Positions 42,401 to 64,000 of a stretch of DNA of 64,000 bases are shown here, piece after piece (positions within the stretch are counted from its first letter, which is position 1; each line of letters opens with the position of its first letter). The DNA comes from Phallusia mammillata (Eukaryota), in contig OZ281495.1 in the NCBI GenBank assembly GCA_965637545.1, positions 12,772,001 to 12,836,000 on the forward strand. Reading direction: 5' to 3'. Under the pieces are notes generated by a model. That model saw nothing but the letters and a program-made list of their open reading frames with translations. It had not been told where the DNA came from and ran no database searches. Both the position numbers and the translations under genes were made by a program.

Positions 42401-45400
42401 GGAATGAAAATGGAAGTTTTCCATTCTTTCGAAAAAATATCAGTATCCCATATTTTTTGACACAAGAGGTGCAGCAGTTTTTCAAGTGTTGCTCCACCAA
42501 GTTTTAGAAATTCTGCTGCAATTCCATCCACACCTGGCGATTTATTTGCCTTTAGACGGTTGATCGCCTCACCAACCTCAGAGAGTAGTATGGGGGGGGG
42601 TTCGAGTAAACTTGCCTTATCCGGCGTGACTGATAAAACATCAGGCACACCATCAGCCTTGTACATATTTTCACAATAGGCAGCCCACCCTTCTTTGATT
42701 CCCTCACTGTCTCTTTGCAATTGGCAAGTTCGTTTACAAAAGGAAAATAAATTAGCTAGATACAAAAAAAGCATACACTAAACACTCAAAAACTGAAGTT
42801 AGTCCCATACTGGCTTACCTTCTGTTACCGTGACAGCCTCAGTGGTTTCTATGGTCACTCCCTCTGTTGAAACTTCGGTGATCGGCGTAGCTGCTAAATA
42901 TGAAATATTGGTTCATATTGCACAGTACAAAAGATAAAATGAAGAGCTTACCGGTCGTTGTCGGACCTCGCGTGGTTGTGATAAATTCTGGAAATGAAAA
43001 TTATCTATTAATTATCAACGAAAGTAAGACGAACAACGGTTATTCAATGTAGAAGGTAAGAATCTTAAAATTTAGTTCGAAGAATATGAAAATAGTATAT
43101 ATATAAAAAAATATGAAAAAAAATAAAAAGAAACCAAGAAGAAGGTACCGTGTTATTTTGAAAAATTCAGTAACTATTTCAGTATTGACTAGCGAAGCGA
43201 GAGTCGCTATTTTCGAAAAAGAAAGGTAATAGTAAAAAGGGGAGCCTTGACATCAATGTCTTGAATAGATTTGTGGAACGGTTTGCAAAAAGCAAAGAGT
43301 TTTCATTTTTGCGCGGTGAAACTTCTCTAACAGTCTTGGGACGCTTAACAATAATAGCTAAATGGCAGTGTCACCTCCCACGTTGACCAGCACTATAATT
43401 CAATTCAATCACCACTATTTTATCAGTTTCTACCTGCACAGACCGAGTCCTTGATCTCCGACAACCGACTCTCAATCTCACTTAATCCGCCATGGGCATT
43501 GAAAACATCGGATGAGGGGACGCTACTTCCAAGGTTTGACACGAACTCGTCGACAGATTGCGTAAGAGCTGATCCGAGTCCAGGGGAAACGCCCAGCACC
43601 ACCACTTTTGCTCCCATGTCGTGGGCTCGGATGATGTTAATAGGAAGAGGTGTGACACCAGCAGAGGTGCCTTTCTTCGTTGCAAGAAGGATGTACACTT
43701 GAGGAACCAAAGGTCTTGGTTTTCCTTTTAAAAAACGTATAGTTTACCAAAAAAGTAACATTTCGGCAACATCTTTTTTTGTTTGTTTTTTTGAATTTTC
43801 CTCACATTTTGACCTAATAGAGTTTTATGTAAGAATAATTTATGAAAATTTTTGTCGTTAGAAAATTTTTGCGTCACAAAGTTTGTTTTACTTACTGGCG
43901 GGCAATCGTTTTAAAAATTCTGAAAATGCATTGGCAGGATCCGGGTTTTGTGAATTTGTTTCGTTTATTGCTTGAATCGCTTCATAAGTTTGTTGCAAAT
44001 TCCGAGGTTCTAATTCAAACGTTCCGTCATCAAGGAGATTGGAATCGAAGCCTATCACGGACATCTAAAAAGGCAACAAATTTCCAAACTTAGGTTGGAC
44101 CAACTAGTTTAATTGGTTACAAAAGTGGTATAATTACCAGCCGTATAATTACCACTGCTTTCTAAATTCGCTTTTACCTGTGCATTGCTTCCTGACATGA
44201 CAAAACTATCTGAAAACTTCTTCAACACACGTTTTAAGTCATCAAGGTTGTGACCCCGCGTCAACCAATCAGAGGTGTCCACCAGCCACGTGACATCAAC
44301 CGGGCCGTAGTCGCAAGCTGTTGTGAGTAAATGCAAGTTTCAATGTATTTGTAGTCAGTTCATCAATTGAGTTATTGGGAAACGGGTTTTACCTGGTCGT
44401 GTTCCAGTTGTAACAGCTGTTGTTGGTGTTGTGGTAACTGTAAGGAAAACAATACACATAAATTTTGTGGACAGTAAGCAAATTATGCCTTGGTGACAAG
44501 TTAACAATTCAAAATTTAAAGCAAAACTGTATGTTAATATTTAAAAACCCAAAAAACCTTGAGAGTGTTTTATGTTTTATGTGACTTCGTTGTTAATCAC
44601 TGGACTGTTTTTTACCCGGGTATGTTGTAAACTCTGGTGCAGTTGTTGGCGGAGCTGTCGTTGTGGTCACAATATAACAGAAGAGATCGGCTAACTCAGA
44701 AGCCATTATAACCGGATCATCAGCAGCCGTAAGCAGCAAAGTCATTCCTTCCAAAACTCTCATGTATTCATCCCTCCTCGACTTGGTGTAATTCTTAAAA
44801 GTTTCCTCAAAATATCCAACTACGAAGCCGTACCCATCGCGTTTAAGGCGCTTGATTTCACCCAGTATACCGCCATCAGTTGAATTGCCTAGAAGTTGAT
44901 CTGACTCTGGGAGCCGTGTAAGAATAAGAAGAAAGGTTTTGGCGTATTCTGTAACTCTAAGGTTACGGCTGAAGACCAGTTCCACACCAAATTGTAAAGT
45001 GTTCGTCAAGTCAAACGTGTTACCACTGCTCACTTGTGTAATCAGGGAACCATTTGATGAATCAAATCGCTGAAGAAGACGTGTTTTGTTGCTTCCTTCC
45101 TCGTTTAAGTGGATCACTGCCGTGGTAAAGTCCCCGACCAATGCCAACTCAACTCTTGAATACTTAGTACCGTTGTCTATTGCCAAATCGGCAAAGGTGT
45201 TACGCAGCAACGTTGTTACAAATCGATTTCGGTCTGGTCTTGCCCCAATAGCATCATCAACGATAACATATATGTCAATAGGGCGCAAGCACGATGGCGC
45301 AGGTGTAGTTGCTGCGGCTCTTGTTGTGCCTGTTACGGGTGCTGTGGTCAAGGTGGGTGTTGATGTTACCGCTCCTGTCGTGCCCGTTGCAGTTCCTATG

Positions 45401-48400
45401 GTCGAGGTTGGGGTAGGTGTTACCGCTCCTGTCGTGCCCGTTGCAGTTCCTATGGTCGAGGTTGGGGTAGGTGTTACCGCCCCTGTCGTGCCCGTTGCGG
45501 TTCCTATGGTCAAGGGTCCAGTCGGTGTTACCGCTGCTGAACCTGGAGAAGTAGCAGTCGGTGTTACAGCTATTGAAGCCGAAGTAACTGTCGGTGTGGT
45601 TGTGGGTTGCACAGGCACGATCCCTGGTTCACATAAATGTGGTGCAATGTCCATTTCCAGGTCGTTTTCTACAAGTTCGCGCGAGTTGGCCACGCGTCGG
45701 AAGTTCCCTGATGGTCCAGCTATGGTTGCAACATCATCTACACTAAGTGCCCCATCGAAACTTACGACTACGACATTGACACCAGAGTTATGAAGGTCGT
45801 TTAAGACTGTTGTGTCCCTGTTATCAAAAATTGGCTTTGACTTCATTATTAGGAATACAGACGTGTTTCTATCCACCAACAAAGATCTCTTTTCGTTGAG
45901 AAGAGTTTCAAGTGCAGCGCTAAAGTTTGCTGTTGGGCCACCAGGAAGGTTAGGTTGAAGCGAATTCTTGTTTGTGAGGAATGACTGCATTTTAACGTTG
46001 TCATCTGGTGCAATCAGGTAGTTAGCAGCGCTGTCATACTGTATCACACCAACTCTGACTCGATTTACTCCAGTTTCATCAGGGACAAAATTAAGCGGAT
46101 GCAGAGTATAGGATAGTTTGTGTGTAGCGTCGATCATGTCCTCCAAGTTCTTAGCAGTGATGGCCTCTGAATTGTCCCACAAGAAGAACACGTCGGTAGT
46201 ATTTGCGCAGTATGTGGGTGAAATTGGCAGAGTCAGAGGCGCGCGACATACTTTATCAGTAATGTAGTGATACTTTTCCGATACGAAGCTGTTTAAAACG
46301 TACATTACGTTGTCGACCCCCAATAACTCGGTCCAGGCCTGTTTGTCTGCTATGTTGGTATAGGCTTGGGGTGCTGTTACCACTGTTAACAAAACACTGC
46401 GTTGCTTGATACGCTCAATGGCAGCGTTCATTGGTATTTCGTTTGTGGGTTGGCGACCTTGAAGTACCAGGATCGATTTCTGTACTCGGCCGTAAGGTCT
46501 GGCACCTTTATCGCTATTTGTAAGGTAGACATCTGTGACCTCGTCCAGTGCAAACTGCATATCAAATACCCGCACTGTCTCAGCCACCCTGGTCACTTTA
46601 GTGTTTAGCACCGACTGAATACGACCGTCGAGGTCCTGCAGCAATGCGACGGGGTCCCAAACAAAGTTGTTGACTCTCCACGTACGGTGAGCAGCGAGAA
46701 GAACGGCTACGTGAGTCCGCGGTTCCGAAATTGTAATGTTTTGCAGCAAGGCCTTGATAAGGTCAAACACCAACGCCTGTTTTGTGGCTTGGGTCGCTGG
46801 GTCTGTCGCGAGCAATAGGGACGTGTCGATAACTATAACCAGATCAGCAATCATAGTACAGCTCTCCGTCGGTGCCGTAGGCGTCGGCGGTGTCGTTACT
46901 GTCGGTGCTGGTGTCGTTGGCTCAGGCGTCGTTGTAGCTACACTTACTGTTGTGCCCTCGCAAAGTTGGGTCAAAATGCTGAAGGACATACGAGCGTAGG
47001 CTGCTGTCAAGATGTCGTGGATTTGACTTACGTGATAATACGTGGTTGTGCGTGTTGCAGGTCGGGGAGAGCTATTCTGCCAAACAGTCAAAATTATCAG
47101 CTTGATTTTGCGCGCTGCCGCCACTTCGATTGCCTTTGTGATGTTGTCTTGGGGTTCGGAGAAAATAATTATAAACAGCAAGTCTTCAATGGTGCCGTTC
47201 ACATCGTGTATTGATGAAGAGTTAAACGAATCTAGGGCCTTTAATATAGCGTCACCCAAAAGATTGCTTTTGCTTCGTTGCAATTCCAGATCATTGACAG
47301 CGTTTGCTACAAGACTCATATTCTGGTTGGTTGTAATATTTAGATCCTGCTCCACGAAGTCCCCAAACTGGTCGATTCCTACGTGAAGCTTGGAGCCGTT
47401 CTTACCAAAGTCCACAGGGGCAATAGCGCTCACGTAAGCCATAACTATCGTCTTCATGGCGTTAAACTCACTGGCGGCCAGCTGATTCGTGCTGTGCAGA
47501 AGGAACATTATATTTACTGCACCGTCGCAGAACCTCCGCGACGCTGTTATAGGTAGCACGTGTTCATAAGGTGTAGTGGTGGTCTGTGCGGCAGTTGTTG
47601 GGGTTTTCGCAGTTGTGGCGGTCCCTGCTGGTGTTGTAACCTCAATTGTAGTGGCAGTCTCTGCTGAAGTAGTTGCGTTGGTGATGTACAACCCCGCAGT
47701 AGTGATGGGAGTTGTAGGATAAACTTCGGTGGTCAATTCTGGTATTGTTGTGAGACATTCGGCTGGAGTGTAGCAATTCAGATCCCCTGTGTGTGTGCAT
47801 ACGCTACAAAATAATTATAGCGTTTAGAGTGAATCCTACTTCTCATCGGTACTGTGAGATTTAACTTACCATATCAAGCAGGAATCACTGATAACCGTAT
47901 CACCATCGTTGTACAGCTTTCCCATAACATGACAAGTAATTGGGCAGCTCTCAATGCATTGTCCAGTGTTCTCGTCAAACAGGCTCCCTGAGAAATCAAT
48001 ATCAAATTAGGTATCAGTGCGACATAGAGCAAACAAATAAAAGCAACATTATACACGGATTAGAAAAGTAATTTAATCAACATCTGCATGATGTATTCTT
48101 TATAGACAATATACTCTAGCTCTTAGGTTTTTAAATTAATGAAAAACAAGTCTGCAACTAAAAAATGTAGAAAGGCTGTGTTTTAAAAAAGAAAAGGCCA
48201 ATTTTTTGGGTAGTTGAGTTGAGTTGAGTATATTTCTCTTGGTGAAAGACAACATAGCGACACAATAACTAAACAATCACCAAGCCGCTCATCTTTGAAA
48301 CTTTTAGGAGCGCAAAACAGTAAAAGGCACAAGTAGTGGAATCAAGACTAAACGCTTTAGCTGCAACATATAATAAAGCCAATATTGGCTTCTCGTTGTA

Positions 48401-51400
48401 AGTTTGAAAGATGGCTGTGAACAAACCTTCCGGACACTTCGGAAAACAACCTTCCACGCATGGGACCTGCAGTGAACATTGGTTGTGTGAATCGGACAGA
48501 TACTTATGTTGGCAGGTTGTTGGGCAAGCTGTCTCGCATTCCCTGTAGTGCCACAAGCAGTTGGACTCGTTGTTGTTGTAGGCCTCACACATAAGTGCTG
48601 CAAGGTAAGATATATTAATTTAAATCTGGCTAAATAGTTTTCGTTTACATTTTTTAATGTTAAAGTGTCTGTGCAAACTCTGGTTTCGGAATGCCCATAG
48701 ACAAGTATTTATCTCCAACTAAATTTGCAGATTATTTTAAACATGAACGATTGTTCCAAATTACAGATAAAACATTAAAATGCGCATATAGATTTAATGT
48801 TATTTTTACTTACGACACACGGACGGTGTCCTCCACCGTAGTGGCAATCCGGCAGCTGCACATACCGCAGCATACGCCGCCACAGCAGTACAGAAACATT
48901 CACAATCGCCTCCTGTGTTGCACCCGCATGTGTCAAATATACAATTGCTGTAGTACCACGTCACGTCAACCTACAAACCACGGAAACAAATTAAACCGTC
49001 GGTGTCCACAAACCCCAAAGAGGTCCGGTTTTAGAGGGTGTGTAAATGCAAAATATAAGGTACTGTTAGGTTTCTGAAAAGAGGACAGTTGCAGGTTGGG
49101 GTCCAAAGACTACAGAAAGGTTTGAAATCACGAGTTTAAATTGAATTATCTAGGCTAGGAAAAATTTCGGACGCTAAGTGATATTGCTATGGGTTTTTTT
49201 CACTGTTAAATCCAAAATAAACATATTCATACCAGGCTGTGACATGGTACAAACACTTCGCTGTAAAGAATCTTACAGCTCTTTTGCGCCCACGGGTGAC
49301 GGGTGGGAAAGAGTTTACAGGGACTGGTCCATTCGCCAACGTTGTCGCAACTTGGTGATGTCTAGAGTGTAAAAAACAATGATTAAAGAGCTAATTGAAA
49401 ACAAACATTTTTAGTAACAAACAACATAATACAGTTTTAAAAGAAACTTCGTGTTATCAAGGCAATAGGGTTTTTTTCAAAAAATATCGCTCGTATGTAT
49501 TGGGGAAGTTACACCTTTGTATTATTATAGAAGTTGACCTAACCTTCCAACTGTTTCCAAACTCGTATGACGTCACCGCCTGCATTTGGTCGCTTTTTAC
49601 TGCGTCATTGTTCTGATTGTCGTCAAAGTTTCCACACAGGCCACATACCTTACCCTGTAAAAAACGTGTTTCACAGTTCGTTAGACGTAGAGGACGTGAC
49701 AGTTTTTCTCAGAATGTTTGTTTTTGTTTGCCAAGTCAAGTTACAAAATCTGCATACAACTCTATAGTAAGTTATTTTAGAAGAGCATTAGAGAAGAAGC
49801 TTTTACACCTAAATCACGTAGCAGAAGTTAAACACGAGTTCCAAACTCACTACTGGGCCACAAAGTTTACCGTCCTGCAAAAGTAGTTGGACACGGTTTA
49901 CAAAAACCTAAAATAAGCTCAAAAGCTCAATTTTGGCAGCAAAGTTGAAATATCAAGAAACACAACAACTTGGGATTTACAACTTGCCTTGTGTTTTGGA
50001 TCCAGGCGAACGTTGACGGTCGACTTTCGATCCCACGACACGATCAAGCCAATATCATCAACAGTGACCACAGTTAACATGCCGACTTGGTGATAATCCC
50101 ATAGTGTGCGAGTTCGATTAGAAGTTGAACCAGGTGCGAGACCGATTTTTACAATTTCACGCTTTTCTGAAAATAAGTGTAAAAAAACATAACTAAAAAA
50201 AGTAAATTAGCAGCAAAAACTTGAAGACTTTGTTAGAAGCCCTCTTGCATTTAAAAGTGGGGACAAAGTTCTAAATTTTAGCAACAGTTAGAGTGAGCAC
50301 TGCTTACTAAATAATAGCCAAGCAGAACAGCCTTTACAAAAACATTCACTAACAGTTTTCGTATTCAAATGGAAAAAAATTAAAACTTCCTGAACTTTCC
50401 AGTACTATTTCTTTCTGGCTTATAACGGTAAAAGCGAATACTTGGTTGGTGGCACAATGCCGTTGTAAAAGTAAACCGATTTTATTTATATTTAATACAT
50501 TTTAGTTTTAATTAATATTTCTAGACTTCGTAAACTTTATCAAACACCCTACACTCAACATCGATAAAGCCTTTTATCCAAACCTAACGGTTTGGGTATT
50601 TTTGTTTTCACAGTAAACAACAATATAAATTTCTATTATCTTACCGTATCCGAAACCCTCATGAGTGAGCCGAATGGTGACTTTATCTTCAAGAATAATT
50701 AGAACACTTTTCGTGCAAGTCATCCCTCCAACACCGCACAACATATTCTCAACGTGGACGCGGAACGTGCCAGCGCCGTTGTTGCAATAATCCTGTGAAC
50801 AAGATGAGCATGATTTGAGCACAAGCCAAAATATACTATTTGCGGCGACTCATAACAAGAATGACAATGCCACTGACAAATAATATTTCATGGGTATACA
50901 GTAGGACTCACATGAGTTAAAATATATGTGCACGATCCCATATAGTCAAACTTATATCCGTCAAAGGTGATGTAATGCGGATCTCCATAAGCTGTACATG
51001 AGCCCACACATGACTTGCTGGTGCAGTTCCACAGTCGGTTGACACACTCACTAAGGAACAACAATAAATAAGAAATAAAAGCCCGCATGGAAACCGGTTT
51101 TGTTTTTCCAGCCCTACGTTTAAACCAAAATCCTCAACGGACAAAATTTAAGTATTGTCAATTTAAACCAGGGTTCCTCAACGGGGGCGATGGTGACAAT
51201 TTTGGGATTTGGGGGCGATTTTACTTCCAAGGGGGGCGATTTCAAAATTACTGAATGTATAAAAATATTCAAGAATTGTCAGACTAAGCTAACTTACATG
51301 CAAACGTTATTCGTCTTGAAAAAAACATCAGTCGCATGCGGCGCATGAGCTTTTGCTGCTATTATATAAATTGCATTTGGCGATTTTTTTTTACTTTTTT

Positions 51401-54400
51401 TGATATCTATAGCAAGGTTGGTCTGTTTATTAGGCCACAGGGCGCGCTGTTAAGGCTATGTATGGTGACCGGCTCTACATTTTTCAAATATAACAGTATA
51501 ACGAGCTTTCACTCAAACTTGTTTCACTTTTACCATTTCTATAGGCCTAGCGCTTCAAAAACTGCGAACTTTTTGTATCTTTTATTAATGTGGAATGTAT
51601 AGGTTTCTCTTGCACTGAGTAATGATCCATTATTGTCAATCAAAATTACAAAAAGGCTATTGTTTGCGCATAATTGTAAAATGTAATCTTGTCTATGACG
51701 TCACAAACTTTGCTTAGATTCTTTAGAATGGCGTGAAATTGACCCTCAGTGTTGTTGTAGCAATTAAATTGGGCTTTAACTGTTAACATGAGCTTTCGTG
51801 GTGCTCTGTAAAACTAACTGCACGCAAATGCTCAAGAGTCAAGAACTTTAATAAAAATAACAATATAATGGGGGGGGGGCGATTTTGAGCCAGTTCCCTA
51901 GCAAGGGGGCGATTTCGCTAAAAAGGTTGAAGACCACGGATTTAAACTAACGTTTCGTATAATGTTGTTGCGTAGAGGCTGATTTTACAAACTAGAGAAC
52001 AAGCAAAATAATCTACTGCCGCGTTGCCTACCCACGGTTATTCTCTGTAGTAATATAAACTCAAAACGCTTGTGTGATGGTGTTTTCAAGTTCTTACCAT
52101 TTGTTGCAGTCGACGTTCAACGTATGTCCCGGGAAAAAGGCACGGTTGCTATAGTAACAAGGACAATCGAGGGCTTGAATACAAACCGAACGTTCCGAGT
52201 CAAAAACTTGACCTTCAGCGCAGCCGCATCCCTCCACACAAATATCTTTAACAAAAGGTTGTTGTATGAAAAAATTGTTTTAAATTTTTGTCCCGAAAAG
52301 ATTTCAAGTTTTATCGTAAAAAATCATGCCATATCCAGTAACAACTTAACATTGTAATTTGTTAAGCGTTACTTATGCAAATAGTAATAAAGCTTGGTCT
52401 ATACTATAGTTTCGAACCCATTACATCACTTAAAATCACAATTTAAAATATTGGCATAGTTCGTTTCAAAGGCTCACATACTCTTTGGAAAAAAACGCAT
52501 TAAGTAATTAACAATTAAATATCGTTTTTTTTAAACCAGCATGTTTGACACAATTATTGAACATAAACAACATTATTACTTTGAGCGCATTCCTCTCCTA
52601 ATGTTTTGCATGTTGCCTGGCATTCAATTCCTACTGGATTTACTTCGCTAGAGTTGCACGTCTTATAAACTTGTCCGGGAGGGCAGTCAGTCGAACCTGC
52701 AACACGACGGTTAAACATAAAATGGTTTTCGGTACTTGTGAGGTAACTTGTACTAATTTAGAAATCTTAAACACCAAATTTTACTAAAAAATTTGGGTCG
52801 ACTATTAAAGAAGTGTGAAACTTACGGAATAATCTTGCGCCAGCGTCTAGCAGCGATCCGCCTTGCGGTAGGTTTTGAACGCAAGTAAAACGTCCCTCCA
52901 TACAATGGCTGCAAAATAAAATGTAACCATTTATCAGTTTGCTGATTCTGACACCAACCAGAGAAACGTTAAGCCACAAAGGGTACAGCTTTGAATCAGC
53001 AGCAAGAGTAATACACAGAACAAACAAAACAGTTTGGAAACAAACAAAAAAACAATATTTAAAAATGCAAAATAAAAAAAGTATGAGATAAAAACACAAA
53101 AACATAAACTCGCTTAATATGGAACAGTAAGTATTTGTAGATTTAAATAAACATGTTGTAAAAATGACATCAGCATTTTGTTGATTTAGGCCAATAATAA
53201 GTTCAAACAGGGCGCTTAAATACTTTTCTATTGCTGCTACACAACATCCATTTGCCAAGTTAAAATTGAACCTTGTTGCAACAAAACATTAAAAGTTGCC
53301 AATTAAAAGGCTAAATAAGATTTCCAGTTTTAACTGTACAAATTGGATTTCCTGCAACAACAAGGTTACTAACCACTTACCAAGTAGTAAATTCCCTGTG
53401 TACTGTCTCGTATGCTGAGTAAATCAATCCATTGTGGTAACATTCACACTGTGATTTGTCAACGCAAGACCCGTGAGCATCCATGAAGGTGCCTGTGGGA
53501 CAATTGCAACCCTGCACGCAGCGCTCAGGGCAACGCACAGTTTGGTCTGATATGGACCGACATGTTGTGATGCAGGAGCTGCCACATTCCTGGTAAACTT
53601 GGTTGTAAGGGCAGGTTGCCTCTGACAAAAATATAAAAGACTGGTAAGTTGGAAAGGTAGAGCAGTTCTAGAAACGATTTGTTTTGTTTCAGCGTGTTGG
53701 AGTGGAATGATATGTTAATTAAGGCTTTAGAGAAAGTAAACATAAAGTTACCTTACGGTAATCAAGATTAAGGAAACACTGATATAAACTGACGAACCAT
53801 GCAGATCCTAGACTTGTTACTTATCCTGCATGTTGTCACCAAAGGTAGGCAAATGTCAATTCAAAGTATTCACATTGTTTTTTTACCAAATGTGTCTTGT
53901 TAGGTCAGTATTTTTGACCACCTTCGAGCAGAAGTATAAACAAACAAATAATAAAAAATTTTTGGTATAAGGAACAACTGGTTATAAGACGCAGTTTAAA
54001 ATTCATGGGACTTGTGTTAGGTTTAGGTTAGTTTATTTTTAAAACTGTACAAATTAAAAACTAAAATCTCGACTTACGGCAAAAACTCGCACTTCGCCAT
54101 TCGGTGACGTATCCAGCATGGGCACACACTCTAGCGAAATGCGCCACAGAATTGCAGAGACAAACTTCGCCGTCCTCACAGGCACATACATCGAACAGAC
54201 ACTGTTGGTAGAATTTGTTGGGAGGAACGTCGATATGACAGAGTTTGAAAATACTGCTCGTGATAATCGCACACTCGGTGACCGCAAATGGAGCTGAAAA
54301 AGAAAACTGGATCATAAAAGTCACCTAATAACTAGGCCAGTGGTTCTTAACCTTTTTGGTGTGGTTTCCCACTTAAGTAAATCACCAAGTTCGAATTTCC

Positions 54401-57400
54401 CCCTCTGTTATTTTTGTAATGATGTTTTGTGCCCAACATTAACAAAAAAATATTCTTTAATCGAAATAATTTGGTGAAGCGATTTGGTCGGGACCTTAAA
54501 GGGATACTGCAATCTTATTTAGTTTGAATAGTGATTTCGTGAGAAAGTAAAATCAGGTGGAATTTTGAAAAATCTCATGTGATTGCATTAGTCATTTATT
54601 GCATCACAATCAACTCATCAAATGCATTTATTCGCGAACAATAACAAAGTCATTGATACTTTTAGTAATGTCTGTGACGTAACAAACGATTTTTGGATTT
54701 TATGCGCGTTGTAAAACTAGGTGAAGTTAATCTTACATGTTGTTGCGGAAAATATTGTATTAACTTAACTTTCAATGGTTAATTTCAACCCACGGGCCCG
54801 AGTTTGGTGACTTCTAACTCACATAATTTCCCTCCAAAAACATTAAATTTCCCACCGGTTAAGAACCACTGAACTAGGCTATATTGACCCTAAAATAAGG
54901 CATGTATATAAAGCTTATACAAGCGCAAAACGTTTTCGAGGGAACGACGTAGCAAAACATGCCCGAACATAAGGATAGCGAAAATCTTGCTGGTATCAGA
55001 AATATGGTAGAGCCTGGTTAAAAAATAGTCTTATCGCTTGGTCTACCCATTTAAACAGGGTTTAGGTGCTGGTACACAGCGATAGAAAAGTCGTCATGCG
55101 GTACACGGCCAGTATAAGGCCGAGAACCACTGCTGTAGAAGATTCGTAGCATTCTAGATCGATTATGCTCAGATGTTTAATATTTTTGTAGCTGCATAAG
55201 CCACTTGCATAAGCAGTGTTAGCTTGTGTAAGTTCGATCAACATCTATGATCACTTTACGCGCGTAACTTTCATTACACCTTACGTGAAATGAAAAGTAT
55301 GAAAACTAAAATCTCCTTCGGTTATCATGAGTCACTGGCATTGGCTGTTCTGATAGCATCCGGTCAATTCGGAAACGGTGAAAGCCAAGCAAGGGCGTAA
55401 TGCTACGTAATACTCGAAGCAATTTTGTTTGTCAAAACGGTTCGAGTGCCAAGGCCTGTGCGTCCGTTTTGGCCGCAAAATGGCTCAGAATCTTGTGGTG
55501 AAAGGCGGAATTGGAAATGTCGTTGAACAAGGGAATTGACCTACCTCGCTGCTGGTTGACTTGGCACGGTTCGACAAGCTGATTAGGTAACATGTCAATG
55601 CAATTCGGGTTGGCCTTCCACGAATTTCCGAACGATACCGGGTTGCGCTCGACCAATCCTGAAAAATCAAATCGCTATAAGCCGGACATAAATAGATTAC
55701 TGGGATCAGCCCTGAAGCAGCGATCATGACACACTCATATATTTATCACAAAGTACTTCGTCCACGTTGGCTAAAACTTTTCTTTAAAATCATGTCCTGG
55801 TATCTCAAAGTACATACCGTTAAAGTTCATCAAATCGTCTTTCTGGTTATCGTTGTAGTTTCCGCACAAACCACATAACTTGTTCATCCACCTGGGAACA
55901 AAGAAAAATGCAAAAGTAAGTTTTTATCGATAGAAGATTATTGTGCTACCCAATTCTTGTTTGCATGATGGCAACAAAACAAAAGTTTGAAATTTTAAAT
56001 TATTTAGTTGTTACCTTCTTTCCGCCCTGACGTAAACTCGCGAAGTTCCATCCCAATCCACAACAATTCCGATTTGAGTTCGGATTTGGACAAACATCGA
56101 TGAAACCTGAGTGACCTGGAATGTATCTGAAAAATACGTACTTCCCATGTATTACTCAGAAGGAGATTCAAATAAGTGTAAAAAAAACAATTTAAAGACC
56201 CATTCCACCCCGCAATATAATAGTGACTATTTTCGTTCAAAGCAAAAAGAACAAACGGAAAGTATAGGTCCCAACTGCGATTTCGACATTTGAAATCATT
56301 TCCGTTGATGCCACGTGCTAATACAAATCAGCCAACTCATTTACATACAAGTTATCACCATTTGTCCCACCACTATTTTTTACCGCAAACCAACGCAAAA
56401 TTACTATGTTGGTTACCAGGGGAAGCAATTGGTCCAAATCGATAAGGGCGTCGCTTTGATGTAGACCAACTGGCATCGGAACGGACGAAATCAAGTCTTA
56501 ATCGGTGACTAATTGACTGGATACATCAGGCTTACCGCGAATGTATGGAGGCACAACAACCCGGCCGTCCACACTGACCACTTGACCACGACTCAGGCGG
56601 ATGGTCACTCTCGGTTGTGTTAGCGAGGTGTTGTCCATTGCTGGATTAACACGCAATGAGAGGCTGATTTCCTTGGTACACGTCACAGTGGCATCAGAAC
56701 CGCAAACCGTATTGTCAACGTTGATTCTGAATGTAAGAGAACATTTCCCCTAAGCTTTTTAATTGTTTTTCTTTAACGCATTTCAGACACCAGATATCAA
56801 AATGGATAAATCCGAAGTTAAGTAGAAAATGTTTTGCGACGTTTTTACTTCCAAGTGTAAAAAGTTGTACACCTGTATAGTTTCAATTGAATTGAAAACA
56901 GTCGCTGAGTTTTGTGTGCATTTGTGGGTCACTTTTTAACTTAAGACAATAATGTAATAATTACTCATTCTGTTTATGAATGTGTTTAGACATGGACACA
57001 AAATCCAGTTGCAAAATAATGTAACAATCCTACTTAGGCCAAAAAGTACCGAAACAGGTTTGTTCCACTGCAGTCCTTCACAAAAGTGTATGTGCACTCC
57101 CCATGCATTGTGTAAACAAAACCGTCAAATGTCTTGTAATGAGGATCGCCTACTGCTGAACACTCAGATGCGCATGGTAGATCGGTGCAGTTCCAAATGG
57201 CACTCTTGCATTCACTGTAAAATCAAAACGATTAAAACTAGCTTTCTATTGTAAAGGTTTAAAAGAGGTTTGTTTAAAAATTTGTGAAAAAAGGGTATTT
57301 GTAATTGCTTTTAAACTCTTCCGTTAAAGGTTTTCAAGTTTTTATAGCAAAGCTAGTTTTAAACTATCACCTAACAAGAACCAACTGTTAATTTCCCTTA

Positions 57401-60400
57401 CCACTGAGAGCAGGCTTGTCGAAGAACGTATTGAGCCGGGTAGATGATGGAGTTGTGTTCACACGGGCACTGGTCTTCCTGGACACACTGACCGTCGTGA
57501 AGGAGAGTTCCAGATGGACACACGCACCCATCTACACAATGCTCCTCGCATCCAGTGTCCGGTGTCACAAGGTTGTGGCAGGTCCGTGGACAAGAAGAAC
57601 CGCACTCGGTGTAGACCATTCCTTCCGGGCAGATGACCTCTGCAATCAAATGTTTTAGAAAAGTTGGTTAGTATGAATGCACGACGTTCCAAAGTTTTAA
57701 TTTCCGTTTCGGCGTGTGTTGTGTATACCGACTCGCGGTTTACTCACTTACAAACAGACAAACACACTTTTTTAAGCCGATGAGTTTTCACTCAAAAAGC
57801 AACAAACAAAGCAAAAAGTTGATTTTTTATCAACAAAGACGGATTCCTCAGAATTGTTGATTTTTTATCAGCAGAGAGCAACTCTTGACACTCGTGCCAT
57901 AGCATACATGCGAGGTTATTATGATGACACGCCAAAGCAGTATGCCATCTAATCTCTTTAAATGTACTAAAAACACGTACAAATTTGTCTGCTTTCTGAT
58001 TACTATTTAGTTCAACTGATGAAAACCATCGCAAATGTGTTAATTGCCAATATAAGTCACCATTTTGATAAAAAAGTAAATTAGCACGCTCGGTGAAAAA
58101 GTTACCGACAATCTGATCTAAATTATGCTTTAGCAAGAAAGAACTCAAAACCTTGCGTAAAATACGATCACATTTTTAAAACTTATTCAAAACAATATAC
58201 ATCATAATAATTGCTGAAATTTCATCACAAAGAATTGGGAGGACAGTTTTTAACTTACCGCAAAATCCAGGCTGTCTCCATTCCGGTCTGAGATCGGTTT
58301 TGCTCATACAAAGACGAGAGTATTGCGCCACTGAATTACACTGACAATCTGGTCTGAACGTTCTCTGAAATTAAATACAATAAATAAAATATCAAGTAAG
58401 AGGCACGCCAATTAATGTAAGTTAAGTTCTGGGTGTGCATGTTATGTCAATCAGTAGCAAAGTAACACGCATTAGAATAGTAATGTTTTACGATGAAGTT
58501 AAAAAGCATGAACATCTGCTTTATAGCCACAAATCAGTTCTTTACACCAACTTTACACTTCCAACATGGTATAACAATGTTACAGCCTACCACTTAATGA
58601 AAAGCCTCAGATTTACTAAAAAGTAAAAGATTATCCTAAAACGATATGTTAAGGGCTAAACATTGTCATTATCAAAACTTCTGCGTTATTCTGCCAGTGT
58701 TGTATGTACGGAGCCAATATTTTAAGACGGGAAACTTGTGTAACTTACCTCACATCTACAAAGATCTGAAACACACCCATCAACCAGTGGGTCAGGATCA
58801 ACTCCAGCCGCAACGCAATCAGCAAAAGCACGGTGGTTCGGTATAAACACCAAACACACAGCATGGATCGTCTGTGCCAAAAAAAGTTATCAATAAAAAA
58901 CTGGGTTTTAACTGGGTTTCACTGTTCAAGTATTTTATTTCAACATTCCGTTGTGTTTATTTTATCAAAAGTAACATTTAAGGACGTACAAACGTTTGAC
59001 GGTCCTTGGTGTTGAGGACAACCAAGGTAATACAAATACAATATATTTGCGGTCAATACCAAGCTATCGGTAAGGAAAATTGAGCTATAACAGTCTTACA
59101 TCGACGATATCTGCATCCAGGCCTTCGCAGTCGTATGGTAGTACTGCAACATCGGTACAGTGACTGTGAATACCAAGTACTCTCCATCCTCGAGCCAACC
59201 ATATTGGGCTACTCGCGGGACTGTCTGTGCAAAAACAAACAATTATTACAAAAAAATTTCAAGCATACTCTTATAATTTCCGAATATATCAAAAAGACGT
59301 GTAAAGCACATAAGTCAAATACAGGTAACATGAGCATGAATCGTAGGTGCAAAACAAAACGGGTTCATGCCCAAAATCGTATGTTTTTTTCAAAAAAAAT
59401 AGTTTTTACACAAAAATGCTTCTACAATCCACAGTTGAAAATCTATGGGTTTTTTAACTTGGCATAATTCCGCACTTATTATACAGTCTAATAGTCTATC
59501 AAACAGATGTTGGTTCATAATGATAATATGTTCCCATTTTTTAGTAAAATACAATCGTGGATAAACCCAGTATTTCTACACAGATTTGATATTCATATCG
59601 GTAAGCCCCGAATCGACGATGCAGACCAACAGCTCACTAAAATCCAGATCACATGACGATTGGAAGCAAATAGGTTTTAGTCGTGGATTCGAATTCCACA
59701 GATTGGTCTAGCTCAGTCCTGGGCATTTTACGGCCCGCGGGCCACATCCGGCCTGTTGGCTGTCCCTGTCCGGCCCGCGTGAGGTTTAAGTACATTAAAA
59801 CACCAATCCAATATAGGTCTATTTATGCTATGCATAAAATAAGGCAATTTTGCTGTTATTTTAAAAAGCAATTTGTTACATATGACTACGTAGTGATGCA
59901 CGTGCGTAGGCGAACAGCTACGTGTGATGCTGGTCAAAATCGTAATAAAACACAAGTTGTTCAACCAATTGTTACGTTGCCTATAATGCACTTTTGTGTC
60001 GAAATAATACAGCGGGGATGGGAAAAGCACATAAACCTGATTTTTACAAACTGGAATTGATCAACCTAATTGAATAAAAACTTTGGGTTTTAACATTTCA
60101 GCGTAATATTGCAAGCTAAATTGCTATTTTTCATGTCAATTCGCCCGCTTATTTTTTATGCAAACTATAAATATTTGCATAACAACGCTCAAATGTAGAA
60201 TTAAGTTTAACCAAGTTATCGTTGGTTTGGCCCTCGGACATAAGTCAGGTTTCTTATGTGGCCCCTTTTAAAAATTAATTGCCCACCCCTGGTCTAGCTT
60301 ATGCCATTCCGCATGGTGAAGCCTGGAAAAGCGGCTTAATACCGTTTGATACTGCCCCAAAGAGGCCTAATGTAACAGAGTTGTAAACGGGTCTGAAATT

Positions 60401-63400
60401 GGAGCCCGAACCCGGCCCGAACGCGAAAGTACAAGCCCGAAACCCTGCTCGAACCCGATTCGTTTTTGAGAAGCACGTTTAGGCCCGAAAGTTTGATTGA
60501 CAGGCCTATACTTGAAGACTCAAAGTCCCAGACAACAAACACAATAGACAATTGGTATCGAACAAGGCGTTTTGGGGCTGTTTGATATTAGGTCAGGTCC
60601 ACCAACTGGCTATTTATCTAGTGATTTTTTTTTTAATCCTGACACAGAATGTACAGTCAGGCCCGAATCAGGCCGTTTTTTGAGAAAAAACAAGCCCGAA
60701 AATCTGGCCTGATTTACAACTCTGCAATGTACTGCTACCTGGTGTATCCTCTTTGCTCAAACGTTTGATCGCGTTTATAATTACAAAACAACTTACTGTC
60801 GGGCAAAACCATATCATTGGAGGAATCTTGGTCGGCATTTCCGCATAATCCACATAGTTTTCCGTTATACGTTGAATCTTCCAACTCGATTTCAGCCAGA
60901 CCGTTGCCGTTCCACATAATTATTATCCCAACTTTCATTACAACTTTCAGATATTGGCCGATGCGAACAATTGAAAAGCGTTCCTGGGCAAACTTTGTGT
61001 GGTCCAAGCTGAATAAAAATGTTTGTATTTTGACAAACAGATGGTTGTTTTTGCACAGCTTTAACTTTTTATTAGGAGCACTTGTGACACACTTTTAATA
61101 CAAAGAGTATTATTTGTAAACTACCGCCAGGCATGCTTTGTACCGATTTTGTGTACTATCTGGATGACGTATAAGAAAATAGCTTCGGAAAATTTTGAAG
61201 AAAGTGGCTTCGGAAAAATCGGATCTTTGCCTAATCCCGATAGATTTTGTGGTCTAATCGGGTCCGGATAGTACAGGGTTTACTATATAACTGGCTTTCA
61301 AAGCATATTTTGCCTGGCATCTTGTGAGATTTTTGGGGTTGGTAATTTACATGAAAAAATGGCAACTAAACTTACACTTTGCCGTTCATCATTGCTACGT
61401 TGTTAGGGAGTAGTGTTAAGCTATCTGATCCTTGAAAGTTAATGATTATCGCCATAAACTCTGCAGTTGTGTTAACAAGAGGAAGCAGTTCTGCCGGAAG
61501 CTGAAACAATAAGCAAAGTATTATGTAGCAATAAATAATTAAAATTAGATACCAACTTGTAGCAGATTTTACAAATTTAAACAGATATGGTTTTAGGTAA
61601 ATGACGGTTTAAACTAAACTCCTTTAAATAATAGTGTAACAGCCATTGCCCTTAAATGCAATTATAAGTCCATGGTATAAAATAACACGCTTTATTTATG
61701 AAATCAGAGTTCAATCGGGCATTTTGGGTCGGGCAAAAATGTTTTTAACAAGCCGGCATAATTCGGGCATGAATTAACATTCTGTGTCTATTATTGTTCA
61801 TTGTATATGTGTTCTTTTTCATATTCTGTACAGCCGTAGTTTTTGTAGGCTTTAATATGGGCATGTAAAACAAACTTTGGGCTTAAGCGTTTTTTTTTTT
61901 TTCAAAACTATTTGGGTTCGGGCCGGGCTTCGGGTTCTAATTTTGGGCTCGCTTACAACTCGGGGTAAAATATTTATTTTTTGTTGCCAAATAGATTAAG
62001 AGTTACCATTTGCTCACCATCTCGTATGCAGTCTGGTTTGCTATCTCTCCCGTTTCGCGATGAATCGGAACATAATCTTCTGGGTTCTTGGACAGTTCAA
62101 TGGAGAAGGTGTGGTCGGTGCAGTCGGAAATCATTGTGTAATGACATATACCAGGAAAATCGTATGAGCTTCCATCAAATGTGCGTATATGTCGAGCACT
62201 CCACATTGTACAAGTGCTTTCAGCGTGCCGGTGAGACGACAATGCTGCAAGGTATCAATTGGATAAGTGTAGGCTATAGGTTAAATCAGGGGTGGGCAAA
62301 CTACGGCCCGCGGGCCGCATGCGGCCCGGCAAAGGAGTTTGTGCGGCCCGCCAAATGTTCACAAACTTTGAAGAGAAAGTTACCGAGCAACGCTGAATAG
62401 AATTATAAGCACAGGCGTAGATTTTTAAAAATACCGGGGATGCGACTTGCCTAAACACAGATACTTTTTACGTGCTTTAGCCTGTTGTTTCTGCCATGCA
62501 AATCGTCACTTGACACAATTTCTTTGTTCGATAAAGTAAAAGCGGTTTACGTTTTGAAATACAGCCCACTTTGCAATGTTGACGCCAAAACTTTGGTCAC
62601 TTTTGAACAAGTTTAGGTTGTTGCAGTACTTTGCAAACGAACATTAAACACGGCTACTAAAAGCGGCTCGCATTGTTTAATGTTAGCGCAAGGAATATTA
62701 ACAAAAAAAACGTGGTGTAGCCTATGTTGAAACAAATGCTTGTTTATTTTTTAAATCAATTACAATTGTAGCTTTTCAACCAATGTGTGTACAATCATAA
62801 AAGTGACAAGAAACGTATTTGCAGATAGCTGAAAATATACTATGTTAATATTTTGGGCTAAATCAGGGGTACACAACGTGCGGCCGTAAGGCGACATGCG
62901 GCCGCGGAGACAAGTTTGTGCGGTCGTGGCCATGTATGTTAAAATACATGTACTGGCGGCCGTGACGTAACTGAAACTATTATGCCTAATATTTTGATTT
63001 TCAAACTGCTAAAAACAGATTTCGTGAAACTGGAAAAAAGATTACCAGCCTAGTGACCTGTGACCATATACGCCAGGCTTTTTACCTGCTTATTATGTGC
63101 AAACAATGCAAAAAACAGGCACCGCAATCGTCACTATACAGTGTATGACGTCATAAACAGTTAGCTCCGTTCAGCTAAACTAATGCACCAAGTTAGAAGT
63201 TATTAATCTGAGCATTTTAGACGGCTTTAAATGGTATATATAGGATATAAACCTAATTCTTTACACAAGTTATTTTAAAACAAAAAAAAAACAAGCAAAC
63301 AATTGGCGGCCGTTGGTGAAATACTATGCGGCCCCATAAGATTAAAAACCTTTGAATGCGGCCCTTGCACTGAAAAGTTTGCCCACCCCTGGGGTAAATC

Positions 63401-63901: not shown

Positions 63902-64000
63902 CTGTAAACCAAATCCAGATTGGACAAAAAATGGTTCAAATTGACAAACCAAAAGTTTGTAACACATAAATTAGGCCAAGCATTGAAAAATTTTGTACGT

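What the first reader, a model, noticed from the sequence alone, without database searches (positions are those of the whole stretch)
52660..52908. VWF-like propeptide junction: long D2-D' linker with GSLL and R-L-F-R|S
SEEN: the spliced sequence reads C|[41 protein letters not shown], with a phase-1 intron inside the final Arg codon. KNOWN: human VWF reads [42 protein letters not shown] and is cut by furin there; MUC2/5B have a much shorter linker. The linker length, the GSLL-x-DA stretch, an RxxR directly before Ser and a nearby phase-1 intron all resemble VWF. INFERENCE: D1D2 is a cleavable propeptide, suggesting VWF-style processing in an invertebrate. RLFR lacks the P2 basic residue, so it is only a minimal site.
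Basis: partly seen in the sequence, partly recalled or inferred. Interest (0 to 1): 0.72.

Follow-up and report, generated by a model that had tools for sequence, protein, structure and literature searches.

The report
VWF-type propeptide junction in sea squirt
A giant mucin/von Willebrand-factor-like gene, from a sea squirt according to earlier scan notes, has the same long linker and Arg-x-x-Arg motif at the spot where vertebrate VWF sheds its propeptide; lancelets share it and ordinary mucins do not, so this cutting site probably predates vertebrates, but no cutting has been shown.

Summary
On the minus strand, RNA-type contigs from three studies join exon 53381-53621 to mini-exon 52826-52908 and then to exon 52580-52696. 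The spliced text reads ...[32 protein letters not shown]|STDCPPGQ..., with a phase-1 intron inside the last Arg codon (C|GT).

I aligned 97 relatives across this junction.
- Only vertebrate VWF (13 species) and one lancelet gene (four Branchiostoma genomes, REGR|FAMC) have a 25-30-residue linker with R-x-x-R exactly three residues before the first TIL' cysteine. The window has the same layout with a 22-residue linker.
- None of the other 77 (mucins, otogelin, SCO-spondin, hemocytin, a Ciona savignyi relative) has RxxR anywhere in the linker.
- RLFR is the only RxxR in 432 spliced residues.

The phase-1 intron is also present in a lancelet mucin gene, so it is family-wide. The exact GSLL match is to human VWF only; the vertebrate consensus is PGA[YM][LF]xD.

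The tree is unresolved. A clade of window + lancelet gene + VWF is not rejected (AU p = 0.21).

No ascidian orthologue was reachable and no cleavage evidence exists. RLFR is only a minimal furin motif.

Verdict: homologous to the VWF propeptide junction (likely) and cleaved by a furin-type convertase (about even odds). This is a new member of a known kind.

The parts
53381..53621 (-). Exon for TIL2 and most of E2 (end of the D2 assembly). It ends with TG of a split Cys codon.
   Evidence: Pfam TIL, 50.8 bits. The best solved-structure match is human VWF TIL2, 118 bits against 80-85 for mucins and FCGBP. AG acceptor at 53623-53622 and GT donor at 53380-53379. The 3' joint is seen in RNA contigs. 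The 5' two-thirds has no RNA contig.
52826..52908 (-). 83-nt junction mini-exon. It carries the last base of the Cys codon, the end of E2 (HCMEGRFTC), linker residues [18 protein letters not shown], and the first base (C) of the P1 Arg codon.
   Evidence: Joints 52908/53381 and 52696/52826 are present in runs X1, X5 and X13 and absent from DNA run X17. Reading frame. The same mini-exon, phase 2 in and phase 1 out, occurs in the lancelet VWF-like gene, in gar VWF and in a lancelet mucin gene.
52697..52825 (-). 129-nt phase-1 intron (GT..AG) that splits the P1 Arg codon as C|GT.
   Evidence: The human VWF exon 17/18 boundary at c.2281|2282 is phase 1 in codon 761, the P3 residue (PMC7109749). 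Gar VWF has it in the P3 codon, the lancelet VWF-like gene in the P2 codon, and the lancelet mucin two codons before the Cys.
52826..52835 (-). Codons for R-L-F plus the first base of the P1 Arg. The motif R-L-F-R is completed by GT at 52696-52695. P1' Ser is at 52694-52692 and the first TIL' Cys at 52685-52683.
   Evidence: It is the only RxxR in 432 spliced residues. It sits at the same offset (-7/-4 from the Cys) as RxKR in 13 VWFs and REGR in 7 lancelet entries.
52580..52696 (-). Exon for the start of TIL' (D'): (R)[38 protein letters not shown].
   Evidence: RNA joints on both sides. It aligns to VWF and mucin TIL'.
52098..52245 (-). Exon for the rest of TIL' and for E'.
   Evidence: RNA joints. 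Pfam gives a partial TIL match.
48814..51050 (-). D3 exons (VWD3, C8-3): 50911-51050, 50645-50791, 49987-50166, 49544-49653, 49231-49361, 48814-48968.
   Evidence: All joints are seen in RNA contigs. Pfam VWD. The translation is continuous through 49231-49361 and the frame continues in 48814-48968.
53622..62278 (-). Upstream D1 and D2 exons, the putative propeptide: VWD1, C8-1, TIL1 (57404-57631), VWD2 (57043-57210 and others), C8-2 (54079-54294).
   Evidence: tblastn with lancelet P0151 and gar VWF is colinear, with no in-exon stops. Pfam VWD, C8 and TIL. The evidence is homology only. No RNA contig was seen in the part laid, 53450-54700.
63810..63905 (-). EGF-like exon upstream of D1. The gene probably starts beyond the window end.
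   Evidence: Pfam EGF_2 and EGF_PEAR1L. It is 55-61% identical to the N-terminal EGF repeats of lancelet P0151.
44596..47803 (-). Giant exon after D3: end of E3, Thr/Pro-rich stretches and four VWA matches.
   Evidence: Pfam VWA, 113.7 bits, 4 stretches. It starts with the last base of a split Cys codon (TG|C after ...SDSCLI), the same position as the A1 exon of gar VWF (...ELCQI|C).

Best explanation
This is the E2-TIL' (D2-D') junction of a very large secreted VWF/gel-forming-mucin-like protein. The domain order is EGF, D1, D2, D', D3, Thr/Pro-rich stretches and arrays of VWA domains, D4, then Cys-rich C-terminal exons.

The junction is homologous to the propeptide junction of vertebrate VWF. 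It is a flexible linker of about 22 residues ending in R-x-x-R, followed by Ser and, three residues later, the first cysteine of TIL'.

The most likely mechanism has three steps.
1. EGF-D1-D2 acts as an assembly propeptide while D'D3 forms N-terminal disulfide links in the acidic late secretory pathway.
2. A furin-type proprotein convertase then cuts after RLFR.
3. The mature chain begins at STDCPPG.

Shown here: the exons, their splicing, the motif, its exact positional match to VWF and to a lancelet gene, and its absence from mucins.
Inferred: homology by descent, accessibility of the linker, and the cleavage itself.

Because P2 is Phe and P6 is not basic, cutting would be slower or less complete than at the RSKR of VWF.
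For: Splicing and reading frame.

Census of 97 aligned relatives:
- RxxR at -7/-4 from the TIL' Cys occurs in all 13 VWFs and all 7 lancelet 'mucin-2-like' entries (four genomes).
- RxxR occurs nowhere in the linker of the other 77.
- Linker length is 22 residues here, 25 in the lancelet gene, 25-30 in VWF and 4-14 in mucins, otogelin and nearly all SCO-spondins (one SCO-spondin entry is 21). Only a few insect hemocytins (18-31) are also long, and they lack RxxR.

Within lancelets, REGR is invariant across four Branchiostoma genomes while the upstream linker varies. B. lanceolatum and the B. belcheri hybrid add Arg at P6.

The lancelet gene's D2-D' region hits vertebrate VWF (about 200 bits) well above mucins (about 145 bits or less). 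The window's TIL2 exon hits human VWF (118 bits) above MUC5B and MUC2 (80-82 bits).

VWA domains follow D3 in one giant exon that starts at the same split Cys codon as the A1 exon of gar VWF.

The VWF site lies in an unresolved, exposed segment at exactly this E2-TIL' junction (PMC9169620).

Minimal R-X-X-R motifs are genuine furin sites in BMP2/4/6/7 (PMC11735993).

An AU test does not reject a clade of window + lancelet gene + VWF (p = 0.21).
Against: - There is no protein-level evidence of cleavage.
- RLFR lacks the P2 basic residue that every vertebrate VWF in the set has, and it has no basic P6. Aromatic P2 is, to my knowledge, unusual in furin substrates.
- The lancelet site has Phe at P1', which is also atypical.
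- The ML tree, built with the linker columns removed, leaves the chordate backbone a polytomy and weakly places the window with lancelet mucins and otogelin (81/86). Only 2% of bootstrap trees unite the three RxxR groups.
- No orthologue from another ascidian was available, so conservation within tunicates is untested.
- The lancelet gene carries the motif but has no VWA domain. The motif is therefore not tied to a VWF-like architecture.
- RNA contigs stop 30-69 nt into the TIL2/E2 exon. D1-D2 and D'D3 have not been shown on one mRNA.
Confidence: 0.5

Rival explanations
1. The junction is an uncleaved flexible hinge. It descends from the same ancestor as the VWF junction, or has simply grown longer, but RLFR is a relic or a neutral motif. 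D1D2 stays covalently attached, as in MUC2 and MUC5B, and the linker serves only as the 'bridge' joint between beads of the assembling polymer.
For: - The motif is only minimal, with P2 Phe and no basic P6.
- The central part of the protein is mucin-like, with Thr/Pro-rich stretches.
- The tree weakly places the window with lancelet mucins.
- MUC2 assembles with an intact and equally flexible E2-TIL' junction (PMC9169620).
Against: - RxxR is at the exact offset used in VWF, and it is the only RxxR in 432 residues.
- The same offset is invariant in four lancelet genomes while neighbouring linker residues change.
- None of 77 proteins with uncleaved-type junctions carries RxxR in the linker.
- P1' Ser matches VWF.
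Confidence: 0.3
2. The linker is cut, but not by furin at RLFR|S. One candidate is another secretory-pathway protease that accepts a hydrophobic P2, such as an S1P/SKI-1-type enzyme (Arg at P4, hydrophobic P2). The other is an extracellular trypsin-like enzyme acting after secretion.
For: - R-L-F-R has Arg at P4 and a hydrophobic P2. From my own knowledge, this fits the S1P preference R-x-hydrophobic-x at least as well as furin's.
Against: - The feature shared by the three chordate groups is the two Arg residues at P4 and P1, not the P2 residue, which is K/R, G or F.
- No S1P-type motif is present in the lancelet or VWF sequences.
Confidence: 0.12
3. The resemblance is convergent or accidental. 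The sea-squirt linker lengthened independently, and an RxxR happens to sit before TIL'.
For: - Phylogeny does not unite the window with VWF.
- The exact GSLL match is to human only, not to the vertebrate consensus.
- The intron is family-wide.
Against: - The chance of R at both -7 and -4 is about 0.002 per lineage.
- The same arrangement appears in all three chordate subphyla and nowhere else among 97 relatives.
- The AU test does not reject a single clade.
Confidence: 0.08

Closest known systems
Vertebrate von Willebrand factor propeptide junction (human R760-S-K-R763|S764, furin)
   Same: - Same place, the E2-TIL' junction.
- Long linker: 25-30 residues in VWF against 22 here.
- Arg at P4 and P1, Ser at P1', and three residues between P1 and the first TIL' Cys.
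- A phase-1 intron within the motif.
- VWA domains follow D3 in one large exon that starts at the same split Cys codon.

   Different: - P2 is Phe instead of Lys/Arg, so the motif is minimal rather than optimal.
- The intron lies in the P1 codon rather than the P3 codon.
- The protein has many VWA domains in arrays (not three), Thr/Pro-rich stretches and an N-terminal EGF exon.
- Cleavage is not demonstrated.
- Orthology is unresolved.
Branchiostoma 'mucin-2-like' gene (XP_035684621/2 in B. floridae; MUC5AC/mucin-2-like in B. lanceolatum; hybrid-assembly entries)
   Same: - 25-residue linker ending in REGR three residues before the TIL' Cys.
- The same mini-exon, with phase 2 in and phase 1 out.
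- N-terminal EGF repeats.
- Highest BLAST score to the window's TIL2-D3 segment, 310 bits.
   Different: - No VWA domains; it has CysD (Mucin2_WxxW) instead.
- P1' is Phe.
- The intron is in the P2 codon.
- Only 38% identical to the window.
Gel-forming mucins MUC2 / MUC5AC / MUC5B
   Same: - D1-D2-D'-D3 scaffold, CGLCGN motifs and the same mini-exon structure.
- A flexible E2-TIL' joint (PMC9169620).
   Different: - The linker is only 5-12 residues and has no RxxR.
[quoted passage not shown]
Ascidian VWF-like genes (CiVWFL, KY.Chr1.1785 and KY.Chr10.1161; Botryllus BvWF)
   Same: Ascidian genes named for their similarity to VWF and expressed in endostyle zones (PMC8462739; PMC2527998). They are the likely orthologues or paralogues of this gene.
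   Different: None of the papers I read mentions a propeptide site.
Minimal furin sites of BMP2/4/6/7 prodomains (R-X-X-R)
   Same: An R-X-X-R without a basic P2 that is nevertheless cut by furin and releases a prodomain (PMC11735993).
   Different: An unrelated protein family, and the P2 residues differ.

Membership tests
Vertebrate-type VWF (orthologue) | N-terminal D1-D2-D'-D3 with VWD-C8-TIL-E modules | tested here: met
   Pfam VWD, C8 and TIL on the exons. tblastn is colinear with gar VWF and lancelet P0151.
Vertebrate-type VWF (orthologue) | VWA domains inserted directly after D3 | tested here: met
   The giant exon 44596-47803 has 4 VWA matches. It starts at the same split Cys codon as the gar VWF A1 exon.
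Vertebrate-type VWF (orthologue) | Exactly three A domains (A1-A2-A3) and no mucin-type Thr/Pro-rich or CysD modules | tested here: not met
   VWA matches occur in at least three separate exons or blocks across about 30 kb, together with Thr/Pro-rich stretches. The architecture is VWA arrays, not A1-A3.
Vertebrate-type VWF (orthologue) | Groups with VWF in a phylogeny | tested here: inconclusive
   The backbone is a polytomy. AU p = 0.21 for the clade window + lancelet gene + VWF.
Vertebrate-type VWF (orthologue) | Long E2-TIL' linker ending in a convertase motif three residues before the first TIL' Cys | tested here: met
   22-residue linker and RLFR|STDC. The offset is the same as in 13 VWFs.
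Furin/proprotein-convertase cleavage site | Optimal consensus R-X-K/R-R | tested here: not met
   P2 is Phe.
Furin/proprotein-convertase cleavage site | Minimal consensus R-X-X-R followed by a non-hindering P1' | tested here: met
   R-L-F-R|S. Minimal motifs are cut in BMPs (PMC11735993).
Furin/proprotein-convertase cleavage site | Site lies in an exposed, flexible segment | not tested
   This is inferred only from VWF and MUC2, where the junction is unresolved in cryo-EM (PMC9169620). The spliced sequence has no reference, so I could not fold it.
Furin/proprotein-convertase cleavage site | Substrate enters the secretory pathway (signal peptide) | not testable with these tools
   The 5' end of the gene appears to lie beyond the window; an EGF exon sits at 63810-63905.
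Furin/proprotein-convertase cleavage site | Motif conserved in orthologues | tested here: inconclusive
   It is conserved at the same offset in the lancelet gene and in VWF. No ascidian orthologue was found in the protein collections.
Furin/proprotein-convertase cleavage site | Cleavage observed | not testable with these tools
   This needs protein work.
Gel-forming mucin with uncleaved D2-D' junction (MUC2/MUC5 type) | Short E2-TIL' linker (5-12 residues) without a dibasic-spaced motif | tested here: not met
   The linker is 22 residues with RxxR. The mucins in the census have 4-14 residues and no RxxR.

The most novel reading that the evidence does not exclude
The last common ancestor of chordates already had a gel-forming-mucin-like protein whose D1D2 was released by a convertase at the E2-TIL' junction. 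On this reading, VWF's propeptide-assisted assembly and processing is an inherited trait that first served mucus-net or matrix proteins in filter feeders, such as the ascidian endostyle VWF-like proteins and the lancelet 'mucin-2-like' gene. It would have been taken over for haemostasis only later, when the motif was sharpened from RxxR to RxKR.
Probability: 0.35. Interest if true: 0.7.

Novelty: new member of a known kind. Interest (0 to 1): 0.55.

Why it matters
Published comparisons treat the furin site as a feature 'which exists only in VWF' (PMC9169620) and say VWF has no apparent invertebrate orthologue (PMC4948705). One review mentions an ascidian 'proto-VWF' only as unpublished data (PMC3308698).

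Here the same junction layout appears in a sea-squirt gene with VWA arrays and in a lancelet gene without VWA domains. That would date the propeptide cleavage site to before vertebrates and separate its origin from the acquisition of the A domains.

The idea can be tested directly. Express the N-terminal fragment with and without convertase activity and see whether mucus-type polymers in filter feeders use VWF-style propeptide processing.

Tried and rejected
- Exhaustive representative search with the TIL2 exon. The top 150 were dominated by multi-TIL proteins, and no ascidian orthologue appeared. The only hit above 50% identity was a 79-residue fragment from an ENA metagenome assembly.
- Word search with the giant exon, residues 1-400. 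It found nothing, probably because Thr/Pro-rich words swamped it.
- Word search with the stop-free frame that contains the mini-exon. Nothing was found, so the species' own RNA-derived fragments are not in that collection.
- I tried to build a profile by aligning single window exons to a long relative (A1 and A2). MAFFT scattered the short rows, so I dropped the idea.
- PDB search with the 27-residue mini-exon alone gave no hit.
- Exact look-ups of P0035 and of the intronic reverse-transcriptase ORF were not on record. I therefore could not confirm the species myself.
- I considered an internal start at the in-frame Met of HCMEGRF, because the RNA contigs end nearby. I rejected it as a functional start because the following residues have no signal-peptide-like hydrophobic core.
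- I did not fold the junction, because the spliced sequence has no reference.
Full report
WHAT IS THERE. The finding lies on the minus strand, inside a gene that fills almost the whole window. Stop-free frames with Pfam matches give this order.
- An EGF-like exon at 63810-63905.
- D1 and D2 exons from about 62278 to 53381.
- D' and D3 exons from 52696 to about 47870.
- A giant exon at 44596-47803, with Thr/Pro-rich stretches and four VWA matches.
- Many further VWA exons, including a 948-residue open frame at 19645-22488.
- A fourth VWD at 7011-7265 and Cys-rich C-terminal exons.

An intron at 41452-42774 holds a reverse-transcriptase ORF. Earlier notes of this scan name the genome as the sea squirt Phallusia mammillata. 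I could not confirm that myself.

THE OBSERVATION. On the minus strand the mini-exon runs from 52908 to 52826, 83 nt.
- Its first base completes a Cys codon begun in exon 53381-53621 (TG|C, phase 2).
- It then reads [27 protein letters not shown] and ends with the C of an Arg codon.
- After a 129-nt GT..AG intron, the next exon starts at 52696 with GT, followed by TCG ACT GAC TGC. This gives R-S-T-D-C-P-P-G.

Contigs of three RNA-type runs from three studies carry both joints, 52908/53381 and 52696/52826. They also carry six further joints downstream. The DNA run is colinear with the genome. The nine exons I joined translate without a stop into TIL2-E2-linker-TIL'-E'-VWD3 and the start of C8-3.
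- The PDB VWF chain agrees, apart from an engineered furin site.
- RSKR is at residues 760-763 (PMC9169620).
- Cleavage is at Arg763-Ser764 (PMC7109749).

IS IT MORE THAN CHANCE? RLFR is the only RxxR in the 432 spliced residues. With Arg at 3-4%, R at both -7 and -4 from a given cysteine is expected about twice in a thousand. I collected 220 relatives. In 97 of them both flanking cysteines could be aligned.
- RxxR sits at exactly -7/-4 in 20 of the 97. These are all 13 vertebrate VWFs (RVKR, RVRR or RGKR, then S/A-x-x-C). They also include all 7 entries of one lancelet gene from four Branchiostoma genomes (REGR, then F-A-M/R-C).
- None of the other 77 has RxxR anywhere in the linker. This group covers MUC2, MUC5AC/B, MUC19, otogelin, SCO-spondin, insect hemocytin, snail proteins, a Ciona savignyi relative and a lamprey VWA+CysD protein.
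- Linker length is 22 residues in the window, 25 in the lancelet gene and 25-30 in VWF. It is 4-14 in the mucins, otogelin and nearly all SCO-spondins (one SCO-spondin entry is 21). Only a few hemocytins (18-31) are also long, and they lack the Arg pair.
- Within lancelets the Arg pair is invariant while upstream linker residues vary. Two of the lancelet genomes add Arg at P6.

WHAT WEAKENS.
- The intron. The mini-exon with phase 2 at its start and phase 1 at its end is shared by gar VWF, human VWF, the lancelet VWF-like gene and also a lancelet mucin gene. Gar has the intron in the P3 codon. Human has c.2281|2282, codon 761. The lancelet VWF-like gene has it in the P2 codon, and the lancelet mucin two codons before the Cys. 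It is a family-wide intron and not a VWF mark.
- GSLL-x-DA. Non-mammalian VWFs read PGAYLPD, PGAMLSD or PGAYFPE, and the lancelet gene has nothing similar. Only a loose P-x-G-small-hydrophobic-L-x-D pattern is shared, and the exact GSLL match is to human alone.
- Phylogeny. An ML tree of the TIL2-to-D3 segment, with the linker columns removed, leaves the chordate backbone unresolved. It weakly places the window, on a long branch, with lancelet mucins and otogelin. Forcing window + lancelet gene + VWF into one clade costs 3.6 log-likelihood units (AU p = 0.21). The clade is neither shown nor rejected.
- Other similarity measures lean towards VWF. The window's TIL2 exon scores 118 bits on human VWF against 80-85 on mucins and FCGBP. 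The lancelet gene's D2-D' region scores about 200 bits on VWF against about 145 or less on mucins.
- The giant exon begins at the same split Cys codon as the gar VWF A1 exon. I did not check whether mucins share that intron.

HOW IT MOST LIKELY WORKS. In VWF the E2-TIL' segment is a flexible, exposed bridge, and furin cuts it after tubule assembly (PMC9169620). The sea-squirt protein keeps the scaffold and both D1 and D2 CGLCGN motifs. It also keeps the long linker, Arg at P4 and P1, Ser at P1', and the three-residue spacing to the first TIL' cysteine. The simplest reading is that (EGF-)D1D2 is a propeptide released by a furin-type convertase.

The motif is only minimal, with P2 Phe and no basic P6. 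Minimal R-X-X-R sites are cut in BMP2/4/6/7, and kinetic studies show that furin prefers a basic P2 (PMC11735993). I put homology of the junction to the VWF junction at about 0.75 and actual cleavage at about 0.5. The rivals are an uncleaved hinge (0.3), cutting by another protease (0.12) and convergence (0.08).

CAVEATS.
- No orthologue from another ascidian could be retrieved. The collections do not even hold this species' protein.
- The RNA contigs end 30-69 nt into the TIL2/E2 exon, and none covers the upstream exons within 53450-54700. The share of sampled words in 16 RNA-type runs (0.09-0.12) fits the downstream exons alone. The tool warns that contigs cannot show RNA ends and that holes prove nothing. 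Even so, D1-D2 and D'D3 have not been shown on one mRNA.
- The lancelet gene has no VWA domain. The junction type and the A domains are therefore separable characters.

COMPARISON AND NOVELTY. Ascidian 'VWF-like' genes expressed in the endostyle are known (PMC8462739, PMC2527998). A 'proto-VWF in ascidians' has been mentioned as unpublished data (PMC3308698). Comparative work found no apparent invertebrate orthologue of VWF (PMC4948705), and structural work describes the furin site as existing only in VWF (PMC9169620). I found no paper that describes a convertase-type motif at this junction in tunicates or lancelets.

I file this as a new member of a known kind: the VWF propeptide junction, outside vertebrates, in minimal form. 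It is moderately interesting and easy to test. 

Noticed in passing
window 53410-54700: The RNA-type contigs of X1, X5 and X13 end at 53441, 53449 and 53410, inside the TIL2/E2 exon. None covers the rest of that exon or the C8-2 exon (54079-54294). The word shares of 16 RNA-type runs (0.09-0.12) fit the downstream exons only. This could be low 5' coverage of a very long mRNA, a filter, or a shorter transcript.
   Followed up: partly
window 47803 and 47870; L003 34128-34839: The giant VWA exon starts with the last base of a split Cys codon (...SDSCLI|C), the same position and phase as the A1 exon of gar VWF (...ELCQI|C). This agrees with another first-reader note on this window. I did not check whether mucin genes share this intron.
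   Followed up: partly
window 63810-63905: An EGF-like exon upstream of D1 is 55-61% identical to the three N-terminal EGF repeats of the lancelet gene P0151. The gene's 5' end and signal peptide probably lie beyond the window.
   Followed up: partly
window 41452-42774 (-): An intact 440-residue ORF starting with ATG, with reverse-transcriptase-like sequence, sits inside an intron of the VWA region. It is probably a LINE-type element.
   Followed up: no
window 51164-51951 and 54316-54700: These stretches have very high depth in the DNA run (up to about 72,000 against about 90 elsewhere) and some depth in the RNA-type runs. They are high-copy repeats in introns.
   Followed up: no
window 23971-24549 (-): An open frame contains a long run of (N/E)GGVNG-like repeats between VWA exons. 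This is an odd low-complexity insert in the VWA array, if it is coding.
   Followed up: no
P0203 (Lampetra planeri, 3269 aa): This lamprey protein combines VWA and CysD (Mucin2_WxxW) domains, as the window's gene is said to. Its E2-TIL' linker is short and mucin-type, with no RxxR.
   Followed up: partly
window 12544-12738 (-): This exon piece was flagged by another first-reader note as a CysD domain. On its own it gave no Pfam match at E <= 0.001. The domain may be split over several exons.
   Followed up: partly
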